Virus record (IMG/VR): IMGVR_UViG_3300035698_018317
Coordinates: 124,001 to 188,000 of that record
Length of the DNA: 64,000 bases
Direction: 5' to 3' (one strand)
The position numbers and the translations under genes were made by a program. How positions within the stretch are numbered: position 1 is the stretch's first letter; each line of letters starts with the position of its first letter. The notes under the pieces were generated by a model. It was not told the DNA's origin, made no database searches, and worked only from the letters and a program-made list of their open reading frames with translations. Positions 3,048-56,351 of the stretch are shown in pieces.

Positions 3048-3080
3048 GAACCCGAGCATATACGCTTGGGTTCTTTTTTT
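3048..3080 (+). terminator. Intrinsic terminator
   Basis: AGAACCCGAGC-ATATAC-GCTTGGGTTCT then T-run. Confidence 0.8.
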
Positions 3081-3129
3081 AGCTTTACAACTAAGTGAGT
3101 TGACCTACAATAAATTTGTACAAAGTGGA

Positions 3130-3214: not shown

Positions 3215-3691
3215 ATGAAGGCACTCATTAAAGAAGGCAAACTAATAGGTACGTGTAGTGATGAAGACGCTGTTACGGCACTGGCTGATGGAACGGCAGA
3301 TTCAATACTAACTGTAGACCCCGCAGAAGTCGCCCAATTGTCAGGACGCCCTCTGACTCTCGGCCAAAGACTTCAAAGTAAAATCAACAGTATTGGTCGT
3401 GACTTAGATGAGAGTGCGACAGAACTTGTAAAAAAAGCACCGGGATTATGTGGTGCGGCAAAAGATAAAGTACTATCTTTCGCTGCGACAATTAAAAATA
3501 AAGGCGACGAAGCTTTGGCCCAGTTGCGTGTAGTTGCTCATGAACTGACGGCTCCTGAAGCTGAAGTCGAAGCTCCCGCTGAAGTTGAAGAAGCTCCTGT
3601 TGTTGAAGCTCCTGTTGAAGCACCCGCCGAAGAAGCTCCTGCCGCTGTTGAAGCGGTCGAAGTTGTAGAAGAGGAAATCCCCACAGAATGA
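3215..3691 (+). CDS. Hypothetical protein with acidic Ala/Glu/Pro-rich tail
   Basis: ORF track; overlaps next gene (ATGA). Confidence 0.75.
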   Translation: MKALIKEGKLIGTCSDEDAVTALADGTADSILTVDPAEVAQLSGRPLTLGQRLQSKINSIGRDLDESATELVKKAPGLCGAAKDKVLSFAATIKNKGDEALAQLRVVAHELTAPEAEVEAPAEVEEAPVVEAPVEAPAEEAPAAVEAVEVVEEEIPTE

Positions 3692-5031
3692 GTACATTAG
3701 TAGTAGAAGTTTGTAAAGTTAAGTCGGTAAGACCGCATCCAAATGCGGACAGATTGGCTATAGCTACGGTGAAAGCTTGGGAAACCTGCATTCAGTATGA
3801 CCCCGATACTAAGACAGCAGCGTTCAAGCCCGGAGAAAAGTGTATCTATTTCCCACCTGATTGCATTCTTCCTCCAGCACTAGCGAATAGTCCACATCAA
3901 GTATGCAAAACCAAAAATTGTAAAAATTACAATGTAGTTAAAAGTAAAGATTACAAAAATGGAATGTGCATATCTTGTGGGTTAACGATTAAGTTTATGG
4001 ATGTAACTCCGGGTAGACTCGGCGTAATGTCCTATTGTGCTGAATTGCCGAAACAAGCTGATGGAATTCGTAGCGAGGGTGGCCGTGTAAAAGCCACACG
4101 TTTGCGTGGTCGCCCTTCCTACGGGTTTATCATGAAGATTGATGAATCTAAGGGAGATGACCCATCTTGGAAAGTGGGTCAGGATGTAAAGGCTCATTTC
4201 AAAGTAAAGAAATGGGAACCACCTGAGAAGTCCACTGATGGAGATACAGCTACTCCTAATCCTCGTTTCCATAAATATACTGACATAGAAAATTACAATA
4301 ACTTTCCTGAAATCCTTACAGAAGGGGAAGAAGTAATTTTCACAGAAAAGATTCATGGAAAAAACTGTCGATTAGGTATGGTCTTAGATACGAATGAAAA
4401 AGGTGAAGCTGTATGGACGCCCATGTGCGGAAGTCATGCAGTAAGACGAAAGAAACATAGTCTCAAAAAAATCAAAAGAACGTTCTTGAAATCTGTGTTG
4501 GATTCTTTGAAATATGGAATAAGATTCAGAAAGCCTCCCAAATACACTATTGGCCCGATTTCAGAATTTTGGGGTTATATGACTCCAAAAATCGAAAAAA
4601 TGCTGGTTTGGTTAAGGGATGATTATGAGTGGGGAGAACCTATTTCCAGTATAATCCTGTTTGGAGAAATCTACGGGAAAGGCGTTCAAGATATGACCTA
4701 TGGCCACGCAAAACGTGGACTTAGATGTTTTGATATTGCTGTAAATAGGAAATACGTTAATTTTGAATTGAAAGAAAAATTCCTTAAGCAGTTTGAAGTA
4801 GAAATGGTTCCGATACTTTATCGTGGGCCGTTTACCAGAGAAATTCTTCAAAAACACGTCGATGGACCAACCACGATGTGTGCAAAGACATTGGCAGGGA
4901 AATTCTCTGGACGTGAAGGTGTGGTAATCACGCCTGTCAAAGAACGCCATAATCCTCAAGTAGGACGTGTTATTTTTAAGGCAATCTCCGCTGATTACCT
5001 TGCAAGAAAAAACCCCACTGACGGTCACTAA
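3688..5031 (+). CDS. ATP-dependent RNA ligase (Rnl2/DRB0094-like)
   Basis: N-terminal HPNADRL module; nucleotidyltransferase motifs TEKIHG, FGEIYG, FDI, REGVVI, KAISADYL. Confidence 0.9.
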   Translation: MSTLVVEVCKVKSVRPHPNADRLAIATVKAWETCIQYDPDTKTAAFKPGEKCIYFPPDCILPPALANSPHQVCKTKNCKNYNVVKSKDYKNGMCISCGLTIKFMDVTPGRLGVMSYCAELPKQADGIRSEGGRVKATRLRGRPSYGFIMKIDESKGDDPSWKVGQDVKAHFKVKKWEPPEKSTDGDTATPNPRFHKYTDIENYNNFPEILTEGEEVIFTEKIHGKNCRLGMVLDTNEKGEAVWTPMCGSHAVRRKKHSLKKIKRTFLKSVLDSLKYGIRFRKPPKYTIGPISEFWGYMTPKIEKMLVWLRDDYEWGEPISSIILFGEIYGKGVQDMTYGHAKRGLRCFDIAVNRKYVNFELKEKFLKQFEVEMVPILYRGPFTREILQKHVDGPTTMCAKTLAGKFSGREGVVITPVKERHNPQVGRVIFKAISADYLARKNPTDGH

Positions 5032-11557: not shown

Positions 11558-12442
11558 CTAATCCATTGTTATGGCAGGTATATCGCCAAATCTATATATG
11601 AGGTCTTCTTTCCAGGCTGCTCTTTCTTCTTTTGCTTCAGCTAGAAGATTTTGTCCATCAAGTTGCATTCCGCCACCCGGACCCGGAGGGGCTGGATATT
11701 TACTTCTAATTCTGCCGACTATTTCTTTAGCATAACTAAGAGCACCTTCTTGCATAGCCTGAGTCACTTCTTCCCAATCTTTATTTCTTTGCAAGTAGTG
11801 AACTAATATTTTAGATACTCTAGACGGTGTTGGGTAGACTTTAATATGTTTTAATCCGCCAACAAATTCCCATCCACCAAGGTTTGAACTAACTCTTGAG
11901 TACATTTGTTCATATTGTTTATACAAAACCCATTCGCCCATTCTTCCCCAAATAGGTTGGATAGGGTCAATCAAGCCGCCCTGAATGGATGCATAAGCGC
12001 CGCCGGGATAGAAATATTCAACCGGGATAGCTCCATCTAAGTCTGATGCTTGGAAGGCGAACGTTCCTTGTTCTTTGTAGAACACATTTCTTACTATACC
12101 TACATCAGGCGGTAATTCATATACACTTTTACCCGGAGTAGAATTCATTGCGTAATAGTTAAAATATTCTCTTGGTGCATAATCTTCTAAAATCTTCAAA
12201 GATTGGTCTACACAAAAGTTTATATTTTGCTCATCTAATTCCAGTTTTATTGCTGGAGCACCTAACATATGGAGAATATAGTCTCTTATTTGCATTCTGA
12301 CTTTTTCTCTATTTGGTCTCGGTCCTAATTCGTTTTTGTTTAGAGGGTCTACAGGGCCAAGGTCTGAACATGATGAGGGACATTGAACAGATGACATGGT
12401 ATTGTTAGACGGTCTACTTATTGCTAAAGTGTTATTGGCCAT
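11558..12442 (-). CDS. gp13: Neck/head-tail adaptor, T4 gp13-like
   Basis: IRDYILHMLGAPAIKLELDEQNINFCVDQSL and GGGMQLDGQNLLAEAKEE match gp13 pattern. Confidence 0.85.
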   Translation of the reverse strand: MANNTLAISRPSNNTMSSVQCPSSCSDLGPVDPLNKNELGPRPNREKVRMQIRDYILHMLGAPAIKLELDEQNINFCVDQSLKILEDYAPREYFNYYAMNSTPGKSVYELPPDVGIVRNVFYKEQGTFAFQASDLDGAIPVEYFYPGGAYASIQGGLIDPIQPIWGRMGEWVLYKQYEQMYSRVSSNLGGWEFVGGLKHIKVYPTPSRVSKILVHYLQRNKDWEEVTQAMQEGALSYAKEIVGRIRSKYPAPPGPGGGMQLDGQNLLAEAKEERAAWKEDLIYRFGDIPAITMD

Positions 12443-12477: not shown

Positions 12478-13455
12478 ATGGCAGAACAAAAAGTAATCCT
12501 TGGCGATTGTATGCAAATCATGTCTGAAATGGACTCAAAGAGCATAGATGTTGTAGTTTGTAGTCCTCCTTACAATTTAGGAAAAAACTATAAGACATAT
12601 GAAGATAAATTACCTCGGGAAGAATATCTCGAATGGACAAGAAAATGGATGGAACTTGTAAAGAAAGTTTTAAAAGATGATGGGTCTTTTTTTCTAAACA
12701 TAGGATTCACCAACAAAGACCCGTGGTTGGGTATGGATGTGGCATTAGTAGCGAGAGATATATTTGAATTACAGAATAACATAGCTTGGATTAAATCTTT
12801 ATTCGTAGATGGTAAGACATTCGGACATTTCAAGCCAGTTCAGAGTAAAAGGTTTATTAATAATACATTTGAACACATTTTCCATTTTACAAAGGATGGG
12901 AACATTCAGGTAGATAGATTGGGAGTTGGCGTCCCTTATAATGATAAACTAAATGCTGAACGATGGAACAATGAAGGTGGGATAAGATGTCGTGGTAATT
13001 GTTGGTATATTCCTTACGAGACGATAATCAGGGAAGCTGAAACTGGCGTGCCTGAATCTGAAATAGAAAAAAGTTGGTTAACTGTTTCTGAAGCTGCTGA
13101 AAAATCTAAAGTAAATAAAGCCATAATCACAATGGCGGCAAACAAGGGAAAGTTGATAAATAACGGGAAGAAAAGAAGAGAAAGACGGATTGACCCTGTA
13201 GATTTGGCAAGGTGGATGGAGGAAAGATTTGAACCAAAAAACGCTGACCATCCTGCGATATATCCTTGGAAGCTTCCAGAAATGTGCATTAAACTACATG
13301 GTATAAAAGATGATATGGTTATATTGGACCCATTTTTAGGTTGGGGCAATAGTCTTATTGCGTCTAAAAAGTTAGGCGTTAATGGAATTGGCATTGATGT
13401 TGATGAAGAATATGTAAAAGAAGCCAAAAGTCAAATAAATAGCATACATATATAA
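12478..13455 (+). CDS. beta-class amino (probably N4-cytosine) DNA methyltransferase with inserted HTH
   Basis: SPPY catalytic motif; HPAIYP; ILDPFLGWG SAM motif; insert at about 13030-13240. Confidence 0.9.
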   Translation: MAEQKVILGDCMQIMSEMDSKSIDVVVCSPPYNLGKNYKTYEDKLPREEYLEWTRKWMELVKKVLKDDGSFFLNIGFTNKDPWLGMDVALVARDIFELQNNIAWIKSLFVDGKTFGHFKPVQSKRFINNTFEHIFHFTKDGNIQVDRLGVGVPYNDKLNAERWNNEGGIRCRGNCWYIPYETIIREAETGVPESEIEKSWLTVSEAAEKSKVNKAIITMAANKGKLINNGKKRRERRIDPVDLARWMEERFEPKNADHPAIYPWKLPEMCIKLHGIKDDMVILDPFLGWGNSLIASKKLGVNGIGIDVDEEYVKEAKSQINSIHI

Positions 13456-46630: not shown

Positions 46631-47425
46631 ATGTCAAAAGAAAAAAAGAAATTATATGTAGCAATTGTGTTGGATAAGTCTGGTTCTATGTGGAAAACAA
46701 GAGAAGCTGCCATTATAGGATACAATGAACAAGTTCAACAGTTAAAAATAAATGAAGATGATTTAGAAACAGAAGTTTGTTTGGTAACGTTTAATGGACA
46801 AGTTTTTGAACATCTATGGTGCGTCCCTACTGATGACTTGACAGAAATAGGTGATGATGATTATAAACCATTGGGTGCCACGGCTCTGCGAGATGCCATG
46901 GGATATACAATCAAAAAACTCATGGACACTACAGACTACGAAGATGAAAATAATGCCTATCTCGTTATTGCCATTTCCGATGGTGATACCATGAGTGATA
47001 AACATTACAGTGTTGGTGCTTTAAAAGAATTAATCGAAGGCTGTCAAGCAACGAAACAATGGACGTTCACCCACATGGGATGTAATGAGAATTATCTGAA
47101 AGAAATGGCAAAAGAAACCGGAATTCCAGTGGCTAATTATGCTGCATGGGATAATACATCTCTTGATTCTACGAGGGGTGGAATGAAGAGAGCGACCGCA
47201 AGAACACAACTATATCGTAAAAGCATCGCTGGAGGGCAATGTTGTTCATCAAACTTTATGTCAGATGTGGACAACCAAGTTGCTGATTTCACGAAAGTAG
47301 ATGATATAGATTTAATCGCAAAGAATGTTGATGTTGCATCAATCCCAAAACCCTCAACGACAACTAAAGCTAGAACAGTTTTCTGCGAAGCTAAAGCTGT
47401 TGAGTGGCCCCAAGAAGATAATTAA
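46631..47425 (+). CDS. von Willebrand factor A domain protein
   Basis: MIDAS DKSGS, GATALRDAMG, ISDG. Confidence 0.9.
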   Translation: MSKEKKKLYVAIVLDKSGSMWKTREAAIIGYNEQVQQLKINEDDLETEVCLVTFNGQVFEHLWCVPTDDLTEIGDDDYKPLGATALRDAMGYTIKKLMDTTDYEDENNAYLVIAISDGDTMSDKHYSVGALKELIEGCQATKQWTFTHMGCNENYLKEMAKETGIPVANYAAWDNTSLDSTRGGMKRATARTQLYRKSIAGGQCCSSNFMSDVDNQVADFTKVDDIDLIAKNVDVASIPKPSTTTKARTVFCEAKAVEWPQEDN

Positions 47426-47441
47426 GATGTATAGATAAAGA

Positions 47442-47645
47442 GTGGGTTACAATAATTACAAACAGACTGACCGCAGTAAGTGCGAAGGTTGTATGGTTCC
47501 GTGGGAAACTTATACGGGATTTGGGATGTGCGGAAATAGAAATGGCCAATGCCCTTCGGGGCTAAGCTATCTATCGAAAGAAGATGAGGAATTGCGGCAA
47601 AAAGCCCTGTTTGAAAGTTACGCATATAAAAAAAATCCACTGTAA
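47442..47645 (+). CDS. Small Cys-rich protein
   Basis: ORF track. Confidence 0.55.
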   Translation: MGYNNYKQTDRSKCEGCMVPWETYTGFGMCGNRNGQCPSGLSYLSKEDEELRQKALFESYAYKKNPL

Positions 47646-47658
47646 TCCGATTTTTATG

Positions 47659-47687
47659 TTTACAAACTAGAACGGATGCACTATTAT
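47659..47687 (+). promoter_or_regulatory. sigma70-type promoter of the leader/tRNA operon
   Basis: TTTACA-17 nt-TATTAT. Confidence 0.7.
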
Positions 47688-47710
47688 ACGTTAGAAGTAG
47701 GAAAAGAAAC

Positions 47711-47797
47711 ATGAACACGAATACGTTTTATTTTAGTCTAAGCTTATTATCCTCATCGCTGCTCTTGAGCAACGATAAAGGAACTGCTGTGGACTAA
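47711..47797 (+). CDS. Putative attenuator leader peptide MNTNTFYFSLSLLSSSLLLSNDKGTAVD
   Basis: AGGA SD; 15 consecutive F/Y/S/L codons at 47726-47770; lies between promoter and terminator. Confidence 0.75.
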   Translation: MNTNTFYFSLSLLSSSLLLSNDKGTAVD

Positions 47798-47821
47798 GGT
47801 ACAAAACACCTAGAGACGGGC

Positions 47822-47857
47822 AAAAGCCCCGAACCACAACGGTTCGGGGCTTTTTTT
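47822..47857 (+). terminator. Intrinsic terminator (attenuator) just before the first tRNA
   Basis: AAAAGCCCCGAACC-ACAAC-GGTTCGGGGCTTTT plus T7. Confidence 0.9.
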
Positions 47858-47868
47858 GTTGTATTTTT

Positions 47869-47957
47869 GGAAAATAGGCAGATATTGGCTTGCTGCGCTG
47901 GTTTGCTAAACCAGTTGGCCTGAAAGGGTCATGAGGGTTCGAATCCCTTGTTTTCCG
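47869..47957 (+). tRNA. trnS: tRNA-Ser(GCT)
   Basis: CTGGT-TT GCT AA-ACCAG; long variable arm; GGTTCGAATCC. Confidence 0.95.
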
Positions 47958-47960
47958 TTT

Positions 47961-48048
47961 GGAAAGTAGCCGAATATTGGTTTGTCGGGCTAGTTTCGAA
48001 AACTAGTTGGCCTTCGGGTCATAAGGGTTCGATTCCTCTTACTTTCCG
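47961..48048 (+). tRNA. trnS: tRNA-Ser(CGA)
   Basis: CTAGT-TT CGA AA-ACTAG; long variable arm. Confidence 0.95.
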
Positions 48049-48117
48049 TGGTGACGATTGCCAATGCAACGCTAGGTTGCATTAGTTTAAATAAATTTAA
48101 AAGTGAATATTGCCATC

Positions 48118-48189
48118 GGGCGGTTAACACTGTGGTCAGTGTGCTGGATTGAAGTCCCAGAAAAGTTGGTTCGATACCATCACCGCCCA
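48118..48189 (+). tRNA. Atypical tRNA, anticodon GAA (Phe-like)
   Basis: GGGCGGT/ACCGCCC acceptor; A31-C39 mismatch; loop TT GAA GT; T-stem mismatch. Confidence 0.7.
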
Positions 48190-48207
48190 TTTTATGTACA
48201 CTCCAAC

Positions 48208-48281
48208 GGTGGTTAGAGTGTGACGGTAGCACGGGTGAGCCTGAAACTCATCAAGAATGGGTTCGATTCCCATAACCACCA
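48208..48281 (+). tRNA. Atypical tRNA, loop CC TGA AA, short variable loop
   Basis: GGTGGTT/AACCACC acceptor; GTGAG/CTCAT stem; C at position 33. Confidence 0.65.
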
Positions 48282-48287
48282 TTAGTC

Positions 48288-48362
48288 GGAGCTTTGGTAC
48301 TGGTCTGGTGACAGTGTGCGCCTGAAGAGCGTAAAAGTTCGGTTCGATTCCGAAAGGCTCCA
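48288..48362 (+). tRNA. Atypical tRNA-Phe(GAA) with G37 and enlarged D-loop
   Basis: GGAGCTT/AGGCTCC; TGCGC-CT GAA GA-GCGTA. Confidence 0.75.
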
Positions 48363-48377
48363 TTTAGTTGTAAAAAC

Positions 48378-48450
48378 GCTGCGGTAGCTCAGTTGGTAGA
48401 GCACTAGACTGAAAATCTAGGTGTCGCTGGTTCGATTCCAGTCCGTAGCA
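48378..48450 (+). tRNA. trnF: tRNA-Phe(GAA), canonical
   Basis: AGCTCAGTTGGTAGAGC D-arm; CTAGA-CT GAA AA-TCTAG. Confidence 0.95.
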
Positions 48451-48452
48451 TT

Positions 48453-48600
48453 GGATATTCACATGGCGGAATATATTGTTTCATTGACCCTTGTTCTTTA
48501 TAGAAATGCAAATGGAACTACAAGGCACACGCAGCTTTCTTCGGGAAGTGTGACCTCCCAGCCGAGGTCTTGTCCGTTCAATTCGGACTGTGAATATCCT
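48453..48600 (+). ncRNA. 148-nt tRNA-like structured RNA
   Basis: 11-bp terminal helix GGATATTCACA/TGTGAATATCC next to T-arm GTCCG-TTCAATT-CGGAC; three further hairpins. Confidence 0.7.
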
Positions 48601-48604
48601 AAAC

Positions 48605-48686
48605 GGCAGTATTGAGCAATTGGCTGCTCCCCAGATTGTAAATCTGGCGTCGAAAGGCATTGAAGGTTCGAGTCCTTCTGCTGCCA
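48605..48686 (+). tRNA. trnY: tRNA-Tyr(GTA) copy 1
   Basis: CCAGA-TT GTA AA-TCTGG; long variable arm. Confidence 0.93.
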
Positions 48687-48689
48687 GTT

Positions 48690-48920
48690 ATGAGTAAGAA
48701 AGATGAAAATAAGCGTAGAGAATACCAAATGCAGAATTATTCCGTGTATTATTTTCCTATAACAGGAGAAGTAATGTGTTGCCCAAAAAAAAGAAGTGTA
48801 TTTGGCGAGTTGCACGACCACCACTATTACATAAATTATTGTACTGATTGTGGGCAGCGAGTAAAACTTTTTGTTGCTAAAAGAAAACGTGTAGTTTGTG
48901 AACGTTGTAAAAAAGATTAG
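48690..48920 (+). CDS. Small Zn-ribbon protein inside the tRNA cluster
   Basis: ATG 48690; CTDC and CERC pairs. Confidence 0.6.
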   Translation: MSKKDENKRREYQMQNYSVYYFPITGEVMCCPKKRSVFGELHDHHYYINYCTDCGQRVKLFVAKRKRVVCERCKKD

Positions 48921-48928
48921 TCTATTTC

Positions 48929-49010
48929 GGCAGTATTGAGCAATTGGCCGCTCAGCGGACTGTAAATCCGCCGCCTTCGGGCATTGAAGGTTCGAGTCCT
49001 TCTGCTGCCA
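48929..49010 (+). tRNA. trnY: tRNA-Tyr(GTA) copy 2
   Basis: GCGGA-CT GTA AA-TCCGC. Confidence 0.95.
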
Positions 49011-49016
49011 TTATTA

Positions 49017-49122
49017 GCCCCCGTGACGGAATTGGCAGACGTGCGAGTTTTAAGGGTTTAAGAACCCACTAAAAGAAACTCGTGTCCATACGGGCGTACA
49101 GGTTCGAGTCCTGTCGGGGGCA
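49017..49122 (+). tRNA. trnL: tRNA-Leu body with 22-nt insertion in the anticodon loop
   Basis: Leu-type D-arm and A73; 29-nt loop at 49049-49077 between CGAGT/ACTCG. Confidence 0.8.
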
Positions 49123-49344
49123 TTAAGATTCAAATTCTTTTTGAATCATCTCCATTACTTTGTTAAAATCTTTTTCACTAGTTGTTTTGGTTTGAACGTA
49201 TTCGGCAGCTTTATCTATAGTGAGACCGCCTGTGCGAATGCTATTTACCATCTTACTAGCTAATTTATTTAAATTTAATTCACCATAACCCCCAACAAGT
49301 GGTGGCATTAATCTTGATTCTAACCATGTGTTAAAAGTTTTCAT
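49123..49344 (-). CDS. Small putative head-internal protein (MKTFNTWLE), antisense within the tRNA cluster
   Basis: Start corrected to 49344; TAGATACA motif upstream. Confidence 0.65.
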   Translation of the reverse strand: MKTFNTWLESRLMPPLVGGYGELNLNKLASKMVNSIRTGGLTIDKAAEYVQTKTTSEKDFNKVMEMIQKEFES

Positions 49345-49357
49345 AATGTATCTATTC

Positions 49358-49442
49358 GCCCTAGTGACGGAATTGGCAGACGTGCTGGCCTTAAAAGCCG
49401 GTGTCAATATATGGCGTGCAGGTTCGAGTCCTGTCTAGGGTA
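49358..49442 (+). tRNA. trnL: tRNA-Leu(TAA)
   Basis: CTGGC-CT TAA AA-GCCGG. Confidence 0.92.
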
Positions 49443-49448
49443 TTTTCT

Positions 49449-49517
49449 GGGGACGTGGTGTGCAGAATGAAGTTAGGACTACACAAGGCTTATAGGTTCG
49501 AGTCCTATCACGGAACA
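49449..49517 (+). pseudogene. Degenerate tRNA remnant
   Basis: Intact T-arm ATAGG-TTCGAGT-CCTAT and 4-bp CGTG/CACG; no recognisable anticodon arm. Confidence 0.45.
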
Positions 49518-49522
49518 TCTCT

Positions 49523-49610
49523 GGAAAGCAGCCGAATATTGGTTTGTCGGGCTAGTTTTGAAAACTAGTTGGCCTCCGGGTCATAAGGGTTCGATTCCTC
49601 TTGCTTTCCT
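49523..49610 (+). tRNA. trnS: tRNA-Ser(TGA)
   Basis: CTAGT-TT TGA AA-ACTAG. Confidence 0.93.
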
Positions 49611-49613
49611 TTT

Positions 49614-49702
49614 GGATGGGAGCCGAATATTGGTTTGTCGGGCTAGTTTGGAAAACTAGTTGGCCTGAAAGGGTCATTAGGGTCCAATTCCCTACTCATC
49701 CG
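49614..49702 (+). tRNA. trnS: tRNA-Ser(GGA)
   Basis: CTAGT-TT GGA AA-ACTAG; T-loop variant TCCAATT. Confidence 0.88.
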
Positions 49703-49760
49703 TTCGAATAAAAATATAAAAATTATTCGAACCTTTACTATTATATAGTGGAGGTAAAAA

Positions 49761-50321
49761 ATGAAAGAAAATATTCTTAGATTAAGAAAAGAAGGAAAAT
49801 CATATGGAGAAATACAAAAAGAGCTAGGTTGTTCTAAAAGCACAATCTCATATCACTGTGGAGAAGGGCAGAGGGAAAAACAGGTTGAGAGGCAAAGGCA
49901 ATTCAGAAAAAACAATGTAATTACTAGAAGAATTGGTTCGTTTACACAAAACAGACCTAAAAAAAAGAACAAACAACCTAAATTTGAAAGAAGCGTAACT
50001 CAAAAAACACAAGAAAAAAGTTATGATTTCCAACGCAAACAAAAATGTTCTAAATTTAATTTCAAAGATGTATTAGAGCATTATGGAGAACAAACAACAT
50101 GTTACTTATCTGGAAGACTTATTGATTTATCAGAACCTAGAACTTATCATTTTGACCATATAATTCCGGTTTCAAAAGGAGGAGATTGTAGTTTTGAAAA
50201 CTTAGGAATTGTTCGTAAAGAAGCAAATAGGGCTAAAAGTGACCTATTAGTAGAAGAATTTATTGAGCTTTGTAAAGACATTCTCGAATACAATGGTTAT
50301 ACAGTAATTAAAAACGATTAA
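49761..50321 (+). CDS. HTH plus HNH homing endonuclease
   Basis: SYGEIQKELGCSKSTISYH; HFDHIIPVSKGG...N...N. Confidence 0.88.
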   Translation: MKENILRLRKEGKSYGEIQKELGCSKSTISYHCGEGQREKQVERQRQFRKNNVITRRIGSFTQNRPKKKNKQPKFERSVTQKTQEKSYDFQRKQKCSKFNFKDVLEHYGEQTTCYLSGRLIDLSEPRTYHFDHIIPVSKGGDCSFENLGIVRKEANRAKSDLLVEEFIELCKDILEYNGYTVIKND

Positions 50322-55009: not shown

Positions 55010-55519
55010 ATGCCAATATGTAAAAAATGTAATAAAGAATTTCCAAGTAGGATAGGTAATAAAACTTATCATAAAAGAAGTTATTGTTTAAAATGTTCTC
55101 CTCCGGGTTCCGGTATGGGGTATGAAATAAGAAAGGCCACTAGAAAAAAAGAAAAAGTAAAAGGAAAAAAAGAATGCCCTATTTGCGGGAAATTTTCGAC
55201 TTGGACTAAAAATAATGTTTGTTCAACATGTCGGATGATGTGGCAGAGATGGAAAACAAAAAAAAGAGCGGTAGATATGAAAGGCGGCAAATGCTGCAAG
55301 TGTGGAGAAACAGATATGCGGGTTTTAACCTTCCACCATCTTAATGTGGAGGACAAAGAATATAATATTTCCAATTTCTACTCAAGAATTTGTTGGGAGA
55401 AAATAGTTTTAGAAATAGAAAAATGTGATTTAATGTGTTTTAATTGTCATGTGAGATTACATTCCGAAATCAATAGAGCCAAGTATTCTTGCATAGAACA
55501 ATACTATGCTATGACCTAA
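55010..55519 (+). CDS. HNH endonuclease with Zn ribbons
   Basis: CCKCG...LTFHHLN...EIEKCDLMCFNCH..LH. Confidence 0.85.
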   Translation: MPICKKCNKEFPSRIGNKTYHKRSYCLKCSPPGSGMGYEIRKATRKKEKVKGKKECPICGKFSTWTKNNVCSTCRMMWQRWKTKKRAVDMKGGKCCKCGETDMRVLTFHHLNVEDKEYNISNFYSRICWEKIVLEIEKCDLMCFNCHVRLHSEINRAKYSCIEQYYAMT

Positions 55520-55585: not shown

Positions 55586-55691
55586 GGCTGAATGACGGAA
55601 TTGGCAGACGTGCGAGCTTTTAGGGTTTGAAAACCCATTAAAAGGTGCTCGTGTCCTTCGGGGCGTGTGGGTTCGAATCCCTCTTTGGCCA
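55586..55691 (+). tRNA. trnL: Second tRNA-Leu body with 22-nt anticodon-loop insertion
   Basis: 29-nt loop at 55618-55646 between CGAGC/GCTCG. Confidence 0.8.
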
Positions 55692-55705
55692 GTAAGGAAA
55701 TTGTT

Positions 55706-56164
55706 ATGTGGCGTGAAGAATACGACGAATACGATGATGATGGCTATCCTTATTATTATCATGATGGCCTTGGTTGTCGTTGTTATAAATATGACAGACC
55801 TCCTTATAATAAAAATTATAACGTGCCGTCTCATATTCATATAATGAACAAGAATGAGGCGAAAGTAATGCGTCGTCTCAAAAATGAAACTGGTTTATCT
55901 GAAGAGGGTATTCGAAAGATTAAGAAATATCGAATTATGCTTTCTGAAGCTCAAAAAGAAGGGCAAAAAGCCAAACGGACAAGGGTGCAAAAAGCTAGAG
56001 ATGAAGTAATGAAATGCGTTTGTCGTAAGCTTAAATTAGCCAAAGAACATCCTGTTACACAGAAAGCATATCGTGAAGAATGGGAACGGCGGCGAAAGGA
56101 ATATGATAATCGTCCTTGTTGTAATAGTAGTATTTATCTAGAATCACCAAAGGATGATAGATAA
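55706..56164 (+). CDS. Hypothetical basic protein (start corrected to MWREE)
   Basis: AAGGA SD; track start lies inside the tRNA. Confidence 0.65.
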   Translation: MWREEYDEYDDDGYPYYYHDGLGCRCYKYDRPPYNKNYNVPSHIHIMNKNEAKVMRRLKNETGLSEEGIRKIKKYRIMLSEAQKEGQKAKRTRVQKARDEVMKCVCRKLKLAKEHPVTQKAYREEWERRRKEYDNRPCCNSSIYLESPKDDR

Positions 56165-56169
56165 AATCC

Positions 56170-56253
56170 AGCCTCGTGACGGAATTGGCAGACGTTCGGG
56201 ACTTAAAATCCCGTGCCCTTCGGGGCGTGTGGGTTCGAGTCCCACCGAGGCTA
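56170..56253 (+). tRNA. trnL: tRNA-Leu(TAA) copy 2
   Basis: CGGGA-CT TAA AA-TCCCG. Confidence 0.95.
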
Positions 56254-56267
56254 TTTAGAAATAATCA

Positions 56268-56351
56268 GGCCGAGTGACGGAACTGGCAGACGTGCGGGGT
56301 TCAAATTCCCGTGTCCGAAAGGGCGTGTGGGTTCGAGTCCCACCTCGGCCA
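56268..56351 (+). tRNA. trnL: tRNA-Leu(CAA)
   Basis: CGGGG-TT CAA AT-TCCCG. Confidence 0.95.

What the first reader, a model, noticed from the sequence alone, without database searches (positions are those of the whole stretch)
47659..47957. Leader-peptide attenuator that appears to sense the tRNAs it controls
Seen: promoter TTTACA-17-TATTAT, SD, a 28-codon ORF, then a GC-rich U7 terminator 11 nt before the first tRNA. Codons 6-20 are TTT TAT TTT AGT CTA AGC TTA TTA TCC TCA TCG CTG CTC TTG AGC: only Phe, Tyr, Ser and Leu, using 5 of 6 Ser and 5 of 6 Leu codons. The tRNAs in this window are exactly Ser x4 (all isoacceptors), Phe-like x4, Tyr x2 and Leu x5. Established: his, trp and pheST leaders use ribosome stalling at cognate codons to prevent terminator formation. 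Inference: the phage makes these tRNAs only when the matching charged tRNAs run short (starvation or host anticodon nucleases), with sensing resolved per isoacceptor. Candidate competing pairings: 47794-47813 (CUA-A-GGU/ACCUAG), 47786-47792 GCUGUGG with 47834-47840 CCACAAC (6 of 7), 47818-47821 with 47826-47829. I know of no described attenuator for tRNA genes themselves.
Basis: partly seen in the sequence, partly recalled or inferred. Interest (0 to 1): 0.93.

Follow-up and report, generated by a model that had tools for sequence, protein, structure and literature searches.

The report
Translated leader and terminator before phage tRNAs
An uncultured jumbo phage places a conserved promoter, a tiny Phe/Tyr/Ser/Leu-only reading frame inside a long RNA hairpin, and its strongest terminator just before a cluster of Ser, Phe, Tyr and Leu tRNA genes; this looks like an attenuator, but the RNA switch that would let it sense tRNA supply is weak at best.

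Summary
The whole module, from the -35 hexamer to the T-run, recurs in three related phage lineages, always 10-13 nt upstream of a tRNA-Ser(GCU). It is 88-100% identical between lineages where neutral sites of the neighbouring gene are 56-87% identical. The substitution pattern modestly supports translation. The 15-codon Phe/Tyr/Ser/Leu run is not explained by base composition (0 of 250,000 shuffles), and the downstream tRNAs in two lineages are only Ser, Phe, Tyr and Leu types. The first two tRNAs have no promoter of their own, so transcription must pass the terminator.

The proposed sensing switch fails the main test. Five E. coli attenuators sequester the terminator's 5' arm by 6-13 kcal/mol when a ribosome sits on control codons and by about 0 to -4 at the stop codon. 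The phage leader stays flat (-5 to -9, baseline -5.7) and is no better than shuffles (p 0.19-0.43). A cruder kinetic proxy gives a weak positive hint (top 7% of shuffles). The leader is identical in a lineage that keeps only Ser(GCU) and a GAA tRNA, and three of six Leu codons have no matching phage tRNA in the window.

Best reading: a translated leader-terminator gate of fixed or unknown control. tRNA sensing remains a live rival at about 0.25.

The parts
47659..47687 (+). Sigma-70-type promoter: TTTACA, 17-nt spacer, TATTAT
   Evidence: Consensus scan gives 10 of 12 matches. Both hexamers are invariant in the three lineages while the 17-nt spacer carries 5 substitutions.
47694..47710 (+). 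Open, purine-rich 5' end of the transcript, with SD AGGA at 47699-47702
   Evidence: Unpaired in the minimum-free-energy and centroid folds. Positions 47694-47723 are 80% purine. SD and ATG are kept in all lineages.
47711..47797 (+). 28-codon leader ORF (27 codons in lineages B and C)
   Evidence: All 4 transitions between lineages are synonymous (P 0.024), there is one T-to-K transversion, and the single deletion is 3 nt and in frame. The other two frames give 2 of 5 and 0 of 5 synonymous.
47726..47770 (+). Block of 15 codons encoding only Phe, Tyr, Ser and Leu
   Evidence: Codon adaptation of the whole 28-codon leader is 0.476 (0.416 for this block) against a gene mean of 0.718, and the leader value is lower than all 1674 gene windows of 28 codons.
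47725..47807 (+). Long irregular hairpin: region 1 (47725-47743) pairs with region 2 (47786-47807, which holds the stop codon); apical hairpin at 47750-47782
   Evidence: -26.8 kcal/mol, z = -4.4, 0 of 200 shuffles fold as well. In lineages B and C, the 3-nt deletion plus a C-to-U change restores an 8-bp apical stem.
47818..47829 (+). Constitutive mini-hairpin GGGC-AAAA-GCCC that holds 4 nt of the terminator's 5' arm
   Evidence: Present whatever the ribosome position, worth about -5.7 to -7 kcal/mol. Invariant in all lineages.
47788..47792 (+). UGUGG, which can pair with CCACA (47834-47838) only when region 1 is masked: the sole ribosome-dependent competitor of the terminator
   Evidence: It adds about 1-3 kcal/mol at equilibrium and raises the path barrier from 2.7 to 7-8 kcal/mol.
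47822..47857 (+). Intrinsic terminator: A-tract, 10-bp GC-rich stem, loop ACAAC, T7
   Evidence: Stems are invariant in the three lineages; lineage B has a 2-nt insertion in the loop.
47868..47958 (+). tRNA-Ser(GCU), first gene of the cluster, with an 8-bp acceptor stem
   Evidence: Between lineages A and C, two anticodon-stem pairs changed on both sides and stayed paired (sequences).
47961..48048 (+). tRNA-Ser(CGA), second gene, with no promoter between it and the terminator

Best explanation
Segment 47659-47857 is the promoter-proximal leader of the phage's tRNA cluster and works as a gate. A host-type promoter fires. The first ~30 nt stay open, so ribosomes load and translate a 27-28-residue peptide. 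The coding region folds into an 85-nt hairpin. Most polymerases then stop at a very strong intrinsic terminator, releasing a stable, structured leader RNA of about 165 nt. The polymerases that read through carry on into tRNA-Ser(GCU), tRNA-Ser(CGA) and beyond, and RNase P cuts the tRNAs out. The invariant GGGC/GCCC mini-hairpin, which must be displaced before the terminator stem can close, probably sets a fixed level of leakage. On present evidence the gate is constitutive, or is opened by a factor not visible in the sequence, rather than switched by ribosome position. The peptide and/or the leader RNA probably has a function of its own, because the module is more conserved than the tRNAs it precedes. 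Shown: the anatomy, its conservation, the hairpin, and the lack of a strong ribosome-dependent antiterminator. Inferred: translation (modest support), read-through as the source of the first tRNAs, RNase P processing, and the leak-setting role of the mini-hairpin.
For: Only three haplotypes of the module exist in all data searched, and each sits directly before a tRNA-Ser(GCU) although the upstream genes differ. Module identity is 88-89% (A vs B/C) and 100% (B vs C), against 56% and 87% at fourfold sites of the adjacent VWA gene. The first tRNA in lineage B is a different sequence (47-53% identity). No promoter-like site fits in the 10 nt between the T-run and the tRNA. tRNA-Ser(GCU) is under structural selection, so it must be expressed. 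The terminator is the strongest of only five in 64 kb. Sequestration of the terminator's 5' arm is flat across ribosome positions (-5.0 to -8.8, baseline -5.7), whereas thrL, trpL, hisL, leuL and pheM peak at -6.4 to -13.5 on control codons and fall to about 0 (hisL -0.6 to -3.6) at the stop codon. Against shuffles the phage leader scores p = 0.19-0.43, while four of the five controls score p <= 0.04. The leader is unchanged in lineage B, which lacks Tyr and Leu tRNAs within 13 kb downstream. The rare GC-containing codons lie in helices, and the two unpaired codons (TTA TTA) are the genome's commonest Leu codon.
Against: This reading does not explain why all 15 central codons specify exactly the four amino acids served by the downstream tRNAs, which base composition alone does not produce. 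It also leaves open why the strongest terminator in the window stands before promoterless functional genes if nothing regulates it. Codon diversity and rarity (P 0.008 and 0.0009) are what a sensitive attenuator would show. The path-barrier proxy does depend on ribosome position (2.7 vs 7-8 kcal/mol), and the native sequence is in the top 7% of shuffles. With only three haplotypes, covariation cannot settle which helices matter.
Confidence: 0.4

Rival explanations
1. tRNA-supply-sensing attenuator. Ribosomes that stall on the Phe/Tyr/Ser/Leu codons keep region 1 covered. This frees region 2, whose UGUGG pairs with CCACA at the top of the terminator. Together with the GGGC/GCCC mini-hairpin, that pairing delays nucleation of the terminator stem long enough for polymerase to escape into the tRNA genes. 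The result would be on-demand or homeostatic synthesis of these tRNAs.
For: Leader codons and the tRNA repertoire share the same four-amino-acid alphabet in lineages A and C. The topology resembles an attenuator: control codons lie in region 1 and the stop codon lies inside region 2. The leader uses rare and diverse codons. The first tRNAs depend on read-through. The predicted refolding barrier is 7-8 kcal/mol with a ribosome on control codons and 2.7 at the stop codon or with no ribosome, within the range of trpL, leuL and pheM and in the top 7% of shuffles. There is a sub-threshold Thr_leader match over the whole model (26.5 bits, E 0.007).
Against: The equilibrium switch is only 1-3 kcal/mol, against 8-13 in four controls (3.5 in hisL), and is not better than shuffles. 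The barrier proxy fails to separate real trpL and leuL leaders from shuffles, so its hint is weak. The competitor helix is 5 bp and shows no covariation. The leader is identical in lineage B, which has a reduced tRNA set. TCG is missing from the lineage C leader although that lineage has tRNA-Ser(CGA). No phage tRNA reads CUA or CUC. No Rfam leader family reaches its threshold.
Confidence: 0.25
2. Insulator with a cis-acting read-through element. The structured leader RNA made from the module's own promoter modifies the transcribing polymerase, as put RNA does in phage HK022, so that it passes the terminator. Transcripts arriving from upstream genes are stopped. The ORF would then be secondary.
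For: A conserved, very stable two-level hairpin lies between the promoter and the terminator. The module travels with the tRNAs, not with the upstream gene. The terminator also faces the co-directional upstream operon.
Against: No similarity to any curated RNA family was found. The synonymous bias and the in-frame deletion point to translation, which would melt the hairpin. This idea does not explain the codon alphabet.
Confidence: 0.1
3. Independent small gene whose adjacency to the tRNAs is incidental, for example a small membrane-active or type I toxin-like peptide, or a dual-function small RNA expressed early.
For: The unit is self-contained, with a promoter, SD, ORF and terminator. The mRNA is highly structured. 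The peptide has a hydrophobic centre and polar ends. Small early cassettes bounded by promoters and stem-loops are common in T4-like phages (PMC4122927).
Against: The hydrophobic stretch is only 15-16 residues and is rich in Ser. No antisense promoter was found. The peptide matches no protein family. Three lineages keep the 10-13-nt spacing to tRNA-Ser(GCU) while the upstream context changes. The module is single copy, so it is not a repeated cassette boundary.
Confidence: 0.15

Closest known systems
Ribosome-mediated transcription attenuators of amino-acid operons and of pheST (E. coli trpL, hisL, leuL, thrL, pheM)
   Same: A promoter-proximal SD and short ORF (14-32 codons; leuL also has 28), a run of codons for the relevant amino acids, a helix pairing the control-codon region with the stop-codon region, and an intrinsic terminator 24-64 nt after the stop codon (28 nt here) before the first structural gene.
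   Different: The downstream genes are tRNAs, not enzymes. Four amino acids are represented. The mutually exclusive 2:3 antiterminator, which is the defining part, is missing or reduced to a 5-bp helix. No Rfam leader model reaches its threshold.
T-box riboswitches
   Same: Leader RNAs with a terminator that couple expression of translation-related genes to tRNA charging.
   Different: T-boxes sense uncharged tRNA directly, without translation. No T-box match was found even at E <= 10, and no specifier or T-box sequence is present.
Phage T4 tRNA operon
   Same: A cluster of phage tRNA genes interspersed with homing-endonuclease genes and transcribed as a polycistronic precursor.
   Different: In T4 a middle promoter lies just upstream, and transcription runs through the cluster to a terminator at its end (PMC2330249, citing Broida and Abelson 1985). 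My scan found no terminator between trna.2 and tRNA-Gln. There is no leader ORF and terminator in front.
HK022 put RNA and other processive antitermination RNAs
   Same: A structured RNA transcribed between a promoter and the first terminator.
   Different: There is no sequence or family match. Those elements are not translated. This comparison rests on my own knowledge of HK022 and was not tested here.
Promoter-early stem-loop (PeSL) cassettes of T4-like phages (PMC4122927)
   Same: A conserved early-type promoter and a stem-loop terminator bracketing a small ORF. A terminator-promoter pair of that kind lies at 3048-3111.
   Different: PeSLs are repeated within a genome and act as recombination points. 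This module is single copy in the window and in all loci searched.

Membership tests
Leader-peptide (ribosome-mediated) transcription attenuator | Short ORF with a ribosome-binding site directly downstream of the operon promoter | tested here: met
   Promoter 47659-47687, AGGA 47699-47702, ATG 47711, and an open 5' end. All are kept in three lineages.
Leader-peptide (ribosome-mediated) transcription attenuator | The ORF is translated | tested here: inconclusive
   4 of 4 transitions are synonymous (P 0.024) and the deletion is in frame. This rests on only two ORF haplotypes.
Leader-peptide (ribosome-mediated) transcription attenuator | Run of regulatory codons matching what the operon supplies | tested here: met
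   15 of 15 codons are F, Y, S or L, and the tRNAs are Ser, Phe, Tyr and Leu types. However, 3 of the 15 codons (CUA, CUG, CUC) have no matching tRNA in the window.
Leader-peptide (ribosome-mediated) transcription attenuator | Intrinsic terminator between the leader ORF and the first structural gene | tested here: met
   47822-47857, -24.7 kcal/mol, T7.
Leader-peptide (ribosome-mediated) transcription attenuator | Antiterminator helix that excludes the terminator and forms only when the ribosome sits on the control codons | tested here: not met
   The sequestration switch is 1-3 kcal/mol, against 8-13 in thrL, trpL, leuL and pheM. The native sequence is no better than shuffles, p 0.19-0.43. 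A weak kinetic hint remains.
Leader-peptide (ribosome-mediated) transcription attenuator | Control codons co-vary with the regulated product across relatives | tested here: not met
   The leader is identical in lineages B and C although their tRNA sets differ greatly. The TCG codon is absent where tRNA-Ser(CGA) is present.
Leader-peptide (ribosome-mediated) transcription attenuator | Read-through responds to the supply of charged tRNA | not testable with these tools
   This needs in vitro coupled assays or reporters.
Rfam leader families (Thr_leader, His_leader, Phe_leader, others) | Score at or above the family's gathering threshold | tested here: not met
   Thr_leader 26.5 bits (threshold 55), His_leader 20.1 (49), Phe_leader 17.7 (55). 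Nothing was found at gathering thresholds.
T-box riboswitch | Stem I specifier and the conserved T-box antiterminator sequence | tested here: not met
   No T-box match at E <= 10 in 47600-48120.
Type I toxin-antitoxin | Small peptide with a membrane-spanning hydrophobic helix, plus an overlapping or nearby antisense RNA gene | tested here: not met
   The hydrophobic stretch is 15-16 residues and Ser-rich. There is no promoter-like site on the minus strand in 47600-47900. The peptide matches no family.
PeSL promoter/stem-loop repeats | Several near-identical copies per genome at cassette boundaries | tested here: not met
   nhmmer with the module profile finds one copy in the window and none elsewhere in the related loci.

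The most novel reading that the evidence does not exclude
This would be the first ribosome-mediated attenuator found in front of tRNA genes. A phage would measure, by translating a 15-codon Phe/Tyr/Ser/Leu test track, whether the cell can still decode those codons (for example after tRNA cleavage by a host defence or after phage-induced tRNA loss). It would open a strong terminator to make its own replacement tRNAs only when decoding falters. The switch would be an unusually small competitor that blocks the terminator loop, not a classical 2:3 helix.
Probability: 0.25. Interest if true: 0.88.

Novelty: new variant of a known kind. Interest (0 to 1): 0.6.

Why it matters
How phage tRNA genes are regulated is almost unknown. 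In the textbook case, T4, a promoter simply sits in front of the cluster. Here a conserved, translated, structured leader and a strong terminator stand between the promoter and the tRNAs, so tRNA output must be set at the read-through step. If that step responds to decoding capacity, it would extend leader-peptide attenuation from making amino acids and synthetases to making tRNAs themselves. It would also tie phage tRNA carriage to sensing of tRNA-targeting defences. If the gate is fixed, the module is still an unusually conserved small RNA and peptide of unknown role in a new jumbo-phage group. In either case the element is short enough to test directly in laboratory E. coli or in a cell-free system.

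Tried and rejected
- GenBank phages: blastn with 47400-48100 found no match. The tail sheath protein is at most 40% identical to any known phage, so no cultured relative or host is available.
- Sequence scans: exact and codon-degenerate scans of IMG/VR, of JGI/ENA metagenomes and of GTDB genomes yielded only three module haplotypes. All other pattern hits were chance matches by nhmmer.
- More distant VWA-gene relatives (L004-L006) have neither tRNAs nor the module nearby.
- Rfam at gathering thresholds and at E <= 10 gave no family. Pfam and PHROGs gave nothing for the peptide.
- Internal promoter for the first tRNAs: none fits in the 10-nt gap. The TTTACA-type promoter motif is not enriched in the window.
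- PeSL repeat: rejected, because the module is single copy.
- Base composition as the sole cause of the F/Y/S/L run: rejected, although the pyrimidine-rich and purine-rich arms contribute.
- Covariation: no pair has changes on both sides among the three haplotypes. Only one indel-plus-substitution compensation was seen.
- The findpath barrier proxy proved a poor discriminator, because real trpL and leuL leaders are no better than shuffles. I give it little weight.
- An earlier count of mine, that five third-position changes supported coding, was wrong and is corrected.
- I recalled that 1980s sequencing of the phage T5 tRNA region reported short ORFs among the tRNA genes. I could not verify this in the library, so I do not use it.

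Full report
**What is there.** The window is positions 124001-188000 of a 225-kb viral contig. The contig belongs to a myovirus with tail sheath, baseplate hub, SbcCD-like nuclease, ribonucleotide reductase and RNA ligase genes. It has no close cultured relative. All elements of the finding are present at the stated coordinates:
- Promoter: TTTACA, 17-nt spacer, TATTAT at 47659-47687.
- Ribosome-binding site: AGGA, 8 nt before the ATG.
- ORF: 28 codons at 47711-47797. Codons 6-20 encode only Phe, Tyr, Ser and Leu.
- Terminator: a 10-bp GC-rich stem with loop ACAAC and a T7 run at 47822-47857.
- First gene: tRNA-Ser(GCU), starting 10-11 nt after the T-run.

All Leu tRNAs read UUR, and two of them carry inserts in the anticodon loop.

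**Is it more than chance?** F/Y/S/L runs of 12-16 occur five other times in the six-frame translation of the window, mostly in simple T-rich repeats. Run length alone is therefore not decisive. But shuffling the 45 nt of this block never gave 15 of 15 such codons in 250,000 trials, and the shuffles averaged 7.5-8.7. The ORF has the poorest codon adaptation of any 28-codon stretch compared: 0.476, against a gene mean of 0.718 and 0 of 1674 gene windows as low. It avoids the commonest Ser and Leu codons. The terminator is the strongest of only five canonical ones in 64 kb. The hairpin inside the leader folds at -26.8 kcal/mol with z = -4.4.

**Relatives.** Scans of viral, metagenomic and genomic collections found the module in three lineages only:
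- Lineage A: the window.
- Lineage B: L002 and identical copies.
- Lineage C: L012, L034, L102-L104.

In each lineage the module lies 10-13 nt upstream of a tRNA-Ser(GCU), while the upstream context differs. In A it follows a VWA gene and a 67-codon ORF. In C it follows the VWA gene directly. In B it follows the VWA gene, that gene's own terminator, and two inserted genes. The module is 88-89% identical between A and B/C, and 100% identical between B and C apart from a 2-nt loop insertion. Fourfold-degenerate sites of the VWA gene are 56% and 87% identical for the same comparisons.

The differences are not spread evenly. There are five in the promoter spacer, none in the hexamers, and none in the terminator stems. 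This is the footprint of a working promoter and terminator. Within the ORF all four transitions are synonymous (P 0.024), one transversion changes Thr to Lys, and the only deletion is 3 nt. That is modest support for translation. The deletion, together with a C-to-U change, rebuilds an 8-bp apical stem, which is the one piece of comparative support for the fold.

**Does the leader track the tRNAs?** Lineages A and C both carry only Ser, Phe, Tyr and Leu types, so the shared four-letter alphabet is a stable property. Finer tracking fails:
- Lineage B has only a different Ser(GCU) and a GAA tRNA in the 13 kb downstream, yet its leader is identical to C's. About 25 changes would be expected if the module were drifting.
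- Lineage C has tRNA-Ser(CGA), but its leader lacks TCG.
- No phage tRNA seen reads CUA or CUC.
- A Leu codon differs (UUG in A, CUG in B and C).

**The switch.** The transcript is predicted to fold as follows:
- An open 5' end.
- A long helix between region 1 (47725-47743, codons 5-11) and region 2 (47786-47807, which includes the stop codon).
- An apical hairpin (47750-47782).
- A GGGC/GCCC mini-hairpin (47818-47821 with 47826-47829).
- The terminator.

This is the terminated shape of a classical attenuator. I then asked how strongly the terminator's 5' arm is held by other RNA before its 3' arm is made, as a function of ribosome position. I used E. coli thrL, trpL, hisL, leuL and pheM as positive controls. 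In every control the arm is sequestered most strongly, by 6 to 13 kcal/mol, with the ribosome on control codons. Sequestration falls to about 0 (hisL -0.6 to -3.6) at the stop codon and stays small (-0.1 to -2.6) without a ribosome. In the phage leader it stays between -5.0 and -8.8, with -5.7 at the stop codon. The baseline comes from the constitutive mini-hairpin. Against shuffles of the upstream RNA, four of the five controls are significant (p <= 0.04) and the phage leader is not (p 0.19, or 0.43 with the mini-hairpin held fixed).

A second, kinetic proxy is the best direct refolding path into the terminator. It depends on ribosome position in the phage (2.7 vs 7-8 kcal/mol), and the native sequence lies in the top 7% of shuffles. 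This proxy does not distinguish real trpL or leuL leaders from shuffles, so I give it little weight. Other possible pairings of upstream segments with the terminator exist, but the ensemble calculation already includes them.

**Interpretation.** The first two tRNAs have no room for a promoter and show compensatory evolution. Polymerase must therefore pass the terminator, and the module is an attenuator in the broad sense. The evidence favours a gate whose leak is fixed, or set by something other than ribosome position, producing an abundant, conserved leader RNA or peptide with a role of its own (confidence 0.4). The tRNA-sensing reading stays alive at about 0.25. It alone explains the shared amino-acid alphabet, the codon rarity and the placement. 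It lacks the defining switch, and the available relatives contradict its per-isoacceptor form. A put-like insulator (0.1) and an unrelated small gene (0.15) are the remaining options.

**Comparison with known systems.** The nearest systems in logic are the leader-peptide attenuators, especially pheST, which controls a synthetase. Membership fails on the antiterminator and on codon tracking, and no Rfam leader model reaches its threshold. T-box elements are excluded. In T4 the tRNA cluster has a promoter immediately upstream and no leader terminator (PMC2330249). I found no description of a leader ORF and terminator in front of phage tRNA genes in the literature searched. That library is incomplete.

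Noticed in passing
window 49017-49122 and 55586-55691; L102 7756-7851, 11624-11729, about 12176-12281, 13291-13396: tRNA genes (Leu-type bodies and one Phe body) carry 22-30-nt inserts in the anticodon loop. ARAGORN places most of them at or near position 37/38, and each insert holds a small hairpin. They are far too short for group I introns. The phage encodes an RNA ligase at 3688-5031. No cause or processing route is known to me.
   Followed up: partly
window 47868-47958, 47961-48048, 49523-49610, 49613-49703: The four long Ser tRNAs have 8-bp acceptor stems. The whole-window Rfam run at gathering thresholds did not call them, and one scores best against the tRNA-Sec model (35.5 bits). 8/4-type tRNA-Ser in phages has been described (PMC5389517).
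   Followed up: partly
window 47868-49703 and 55586-56351; L102 7024-13396: In two lineages the tRNA repertoire is restricted to Ser, Phe, Tyr and Leu types, that is, readers of UNN codons plus AGY, or equivalently the long-variable-arm tRNAs plus Phe. It includes several diverged GAA-anticodon tRNAs (48118-48189, 48288-48362, 48378-48450, and 48208-48281 with loop CCUGAAA). Why these four amino acids is unexplained.
   Followed up: partly
window 48057-48117: A 60-nt element (hairpin TGCAAC/GTTGCA followed by an AT-rich tract) is conserved in all three lineages just upstream of the first GAA tRNA. It includes a 22-nt stretch found by exact match in lineages A and B and also present in C. It could be an internal promoter, a processing site or a weak terminator.
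   Followed up: partly
window 3048-3111: A strong terminator (3048-3080) is followed immediately by a TTTACA-type promoter-like site (3084-3111), resembling the promoter/stem-loop pairs described in T4-like phages.
   Followed up: no
window 49761-50321 and 55010-55519; L102 12342-13256: HNH endonuclease genes flank the tRNA sub-clusters, and lineage C has a LAGLIDADG-like ORF. This echoes segB in the T4 tRNA cluster. A small Cys-rich ORF lies between the two tRNA-Tyr genes, at about 48690-48920.
   Followed up: no
L002 6862-8972: Lineage B has two extra genes (218 and 469 codons) and a separate terminator inserted between the VWA gene and the leader module. Its first tRNA is an unrelated 83-nt Ser(GCU).
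   Followed up: partly
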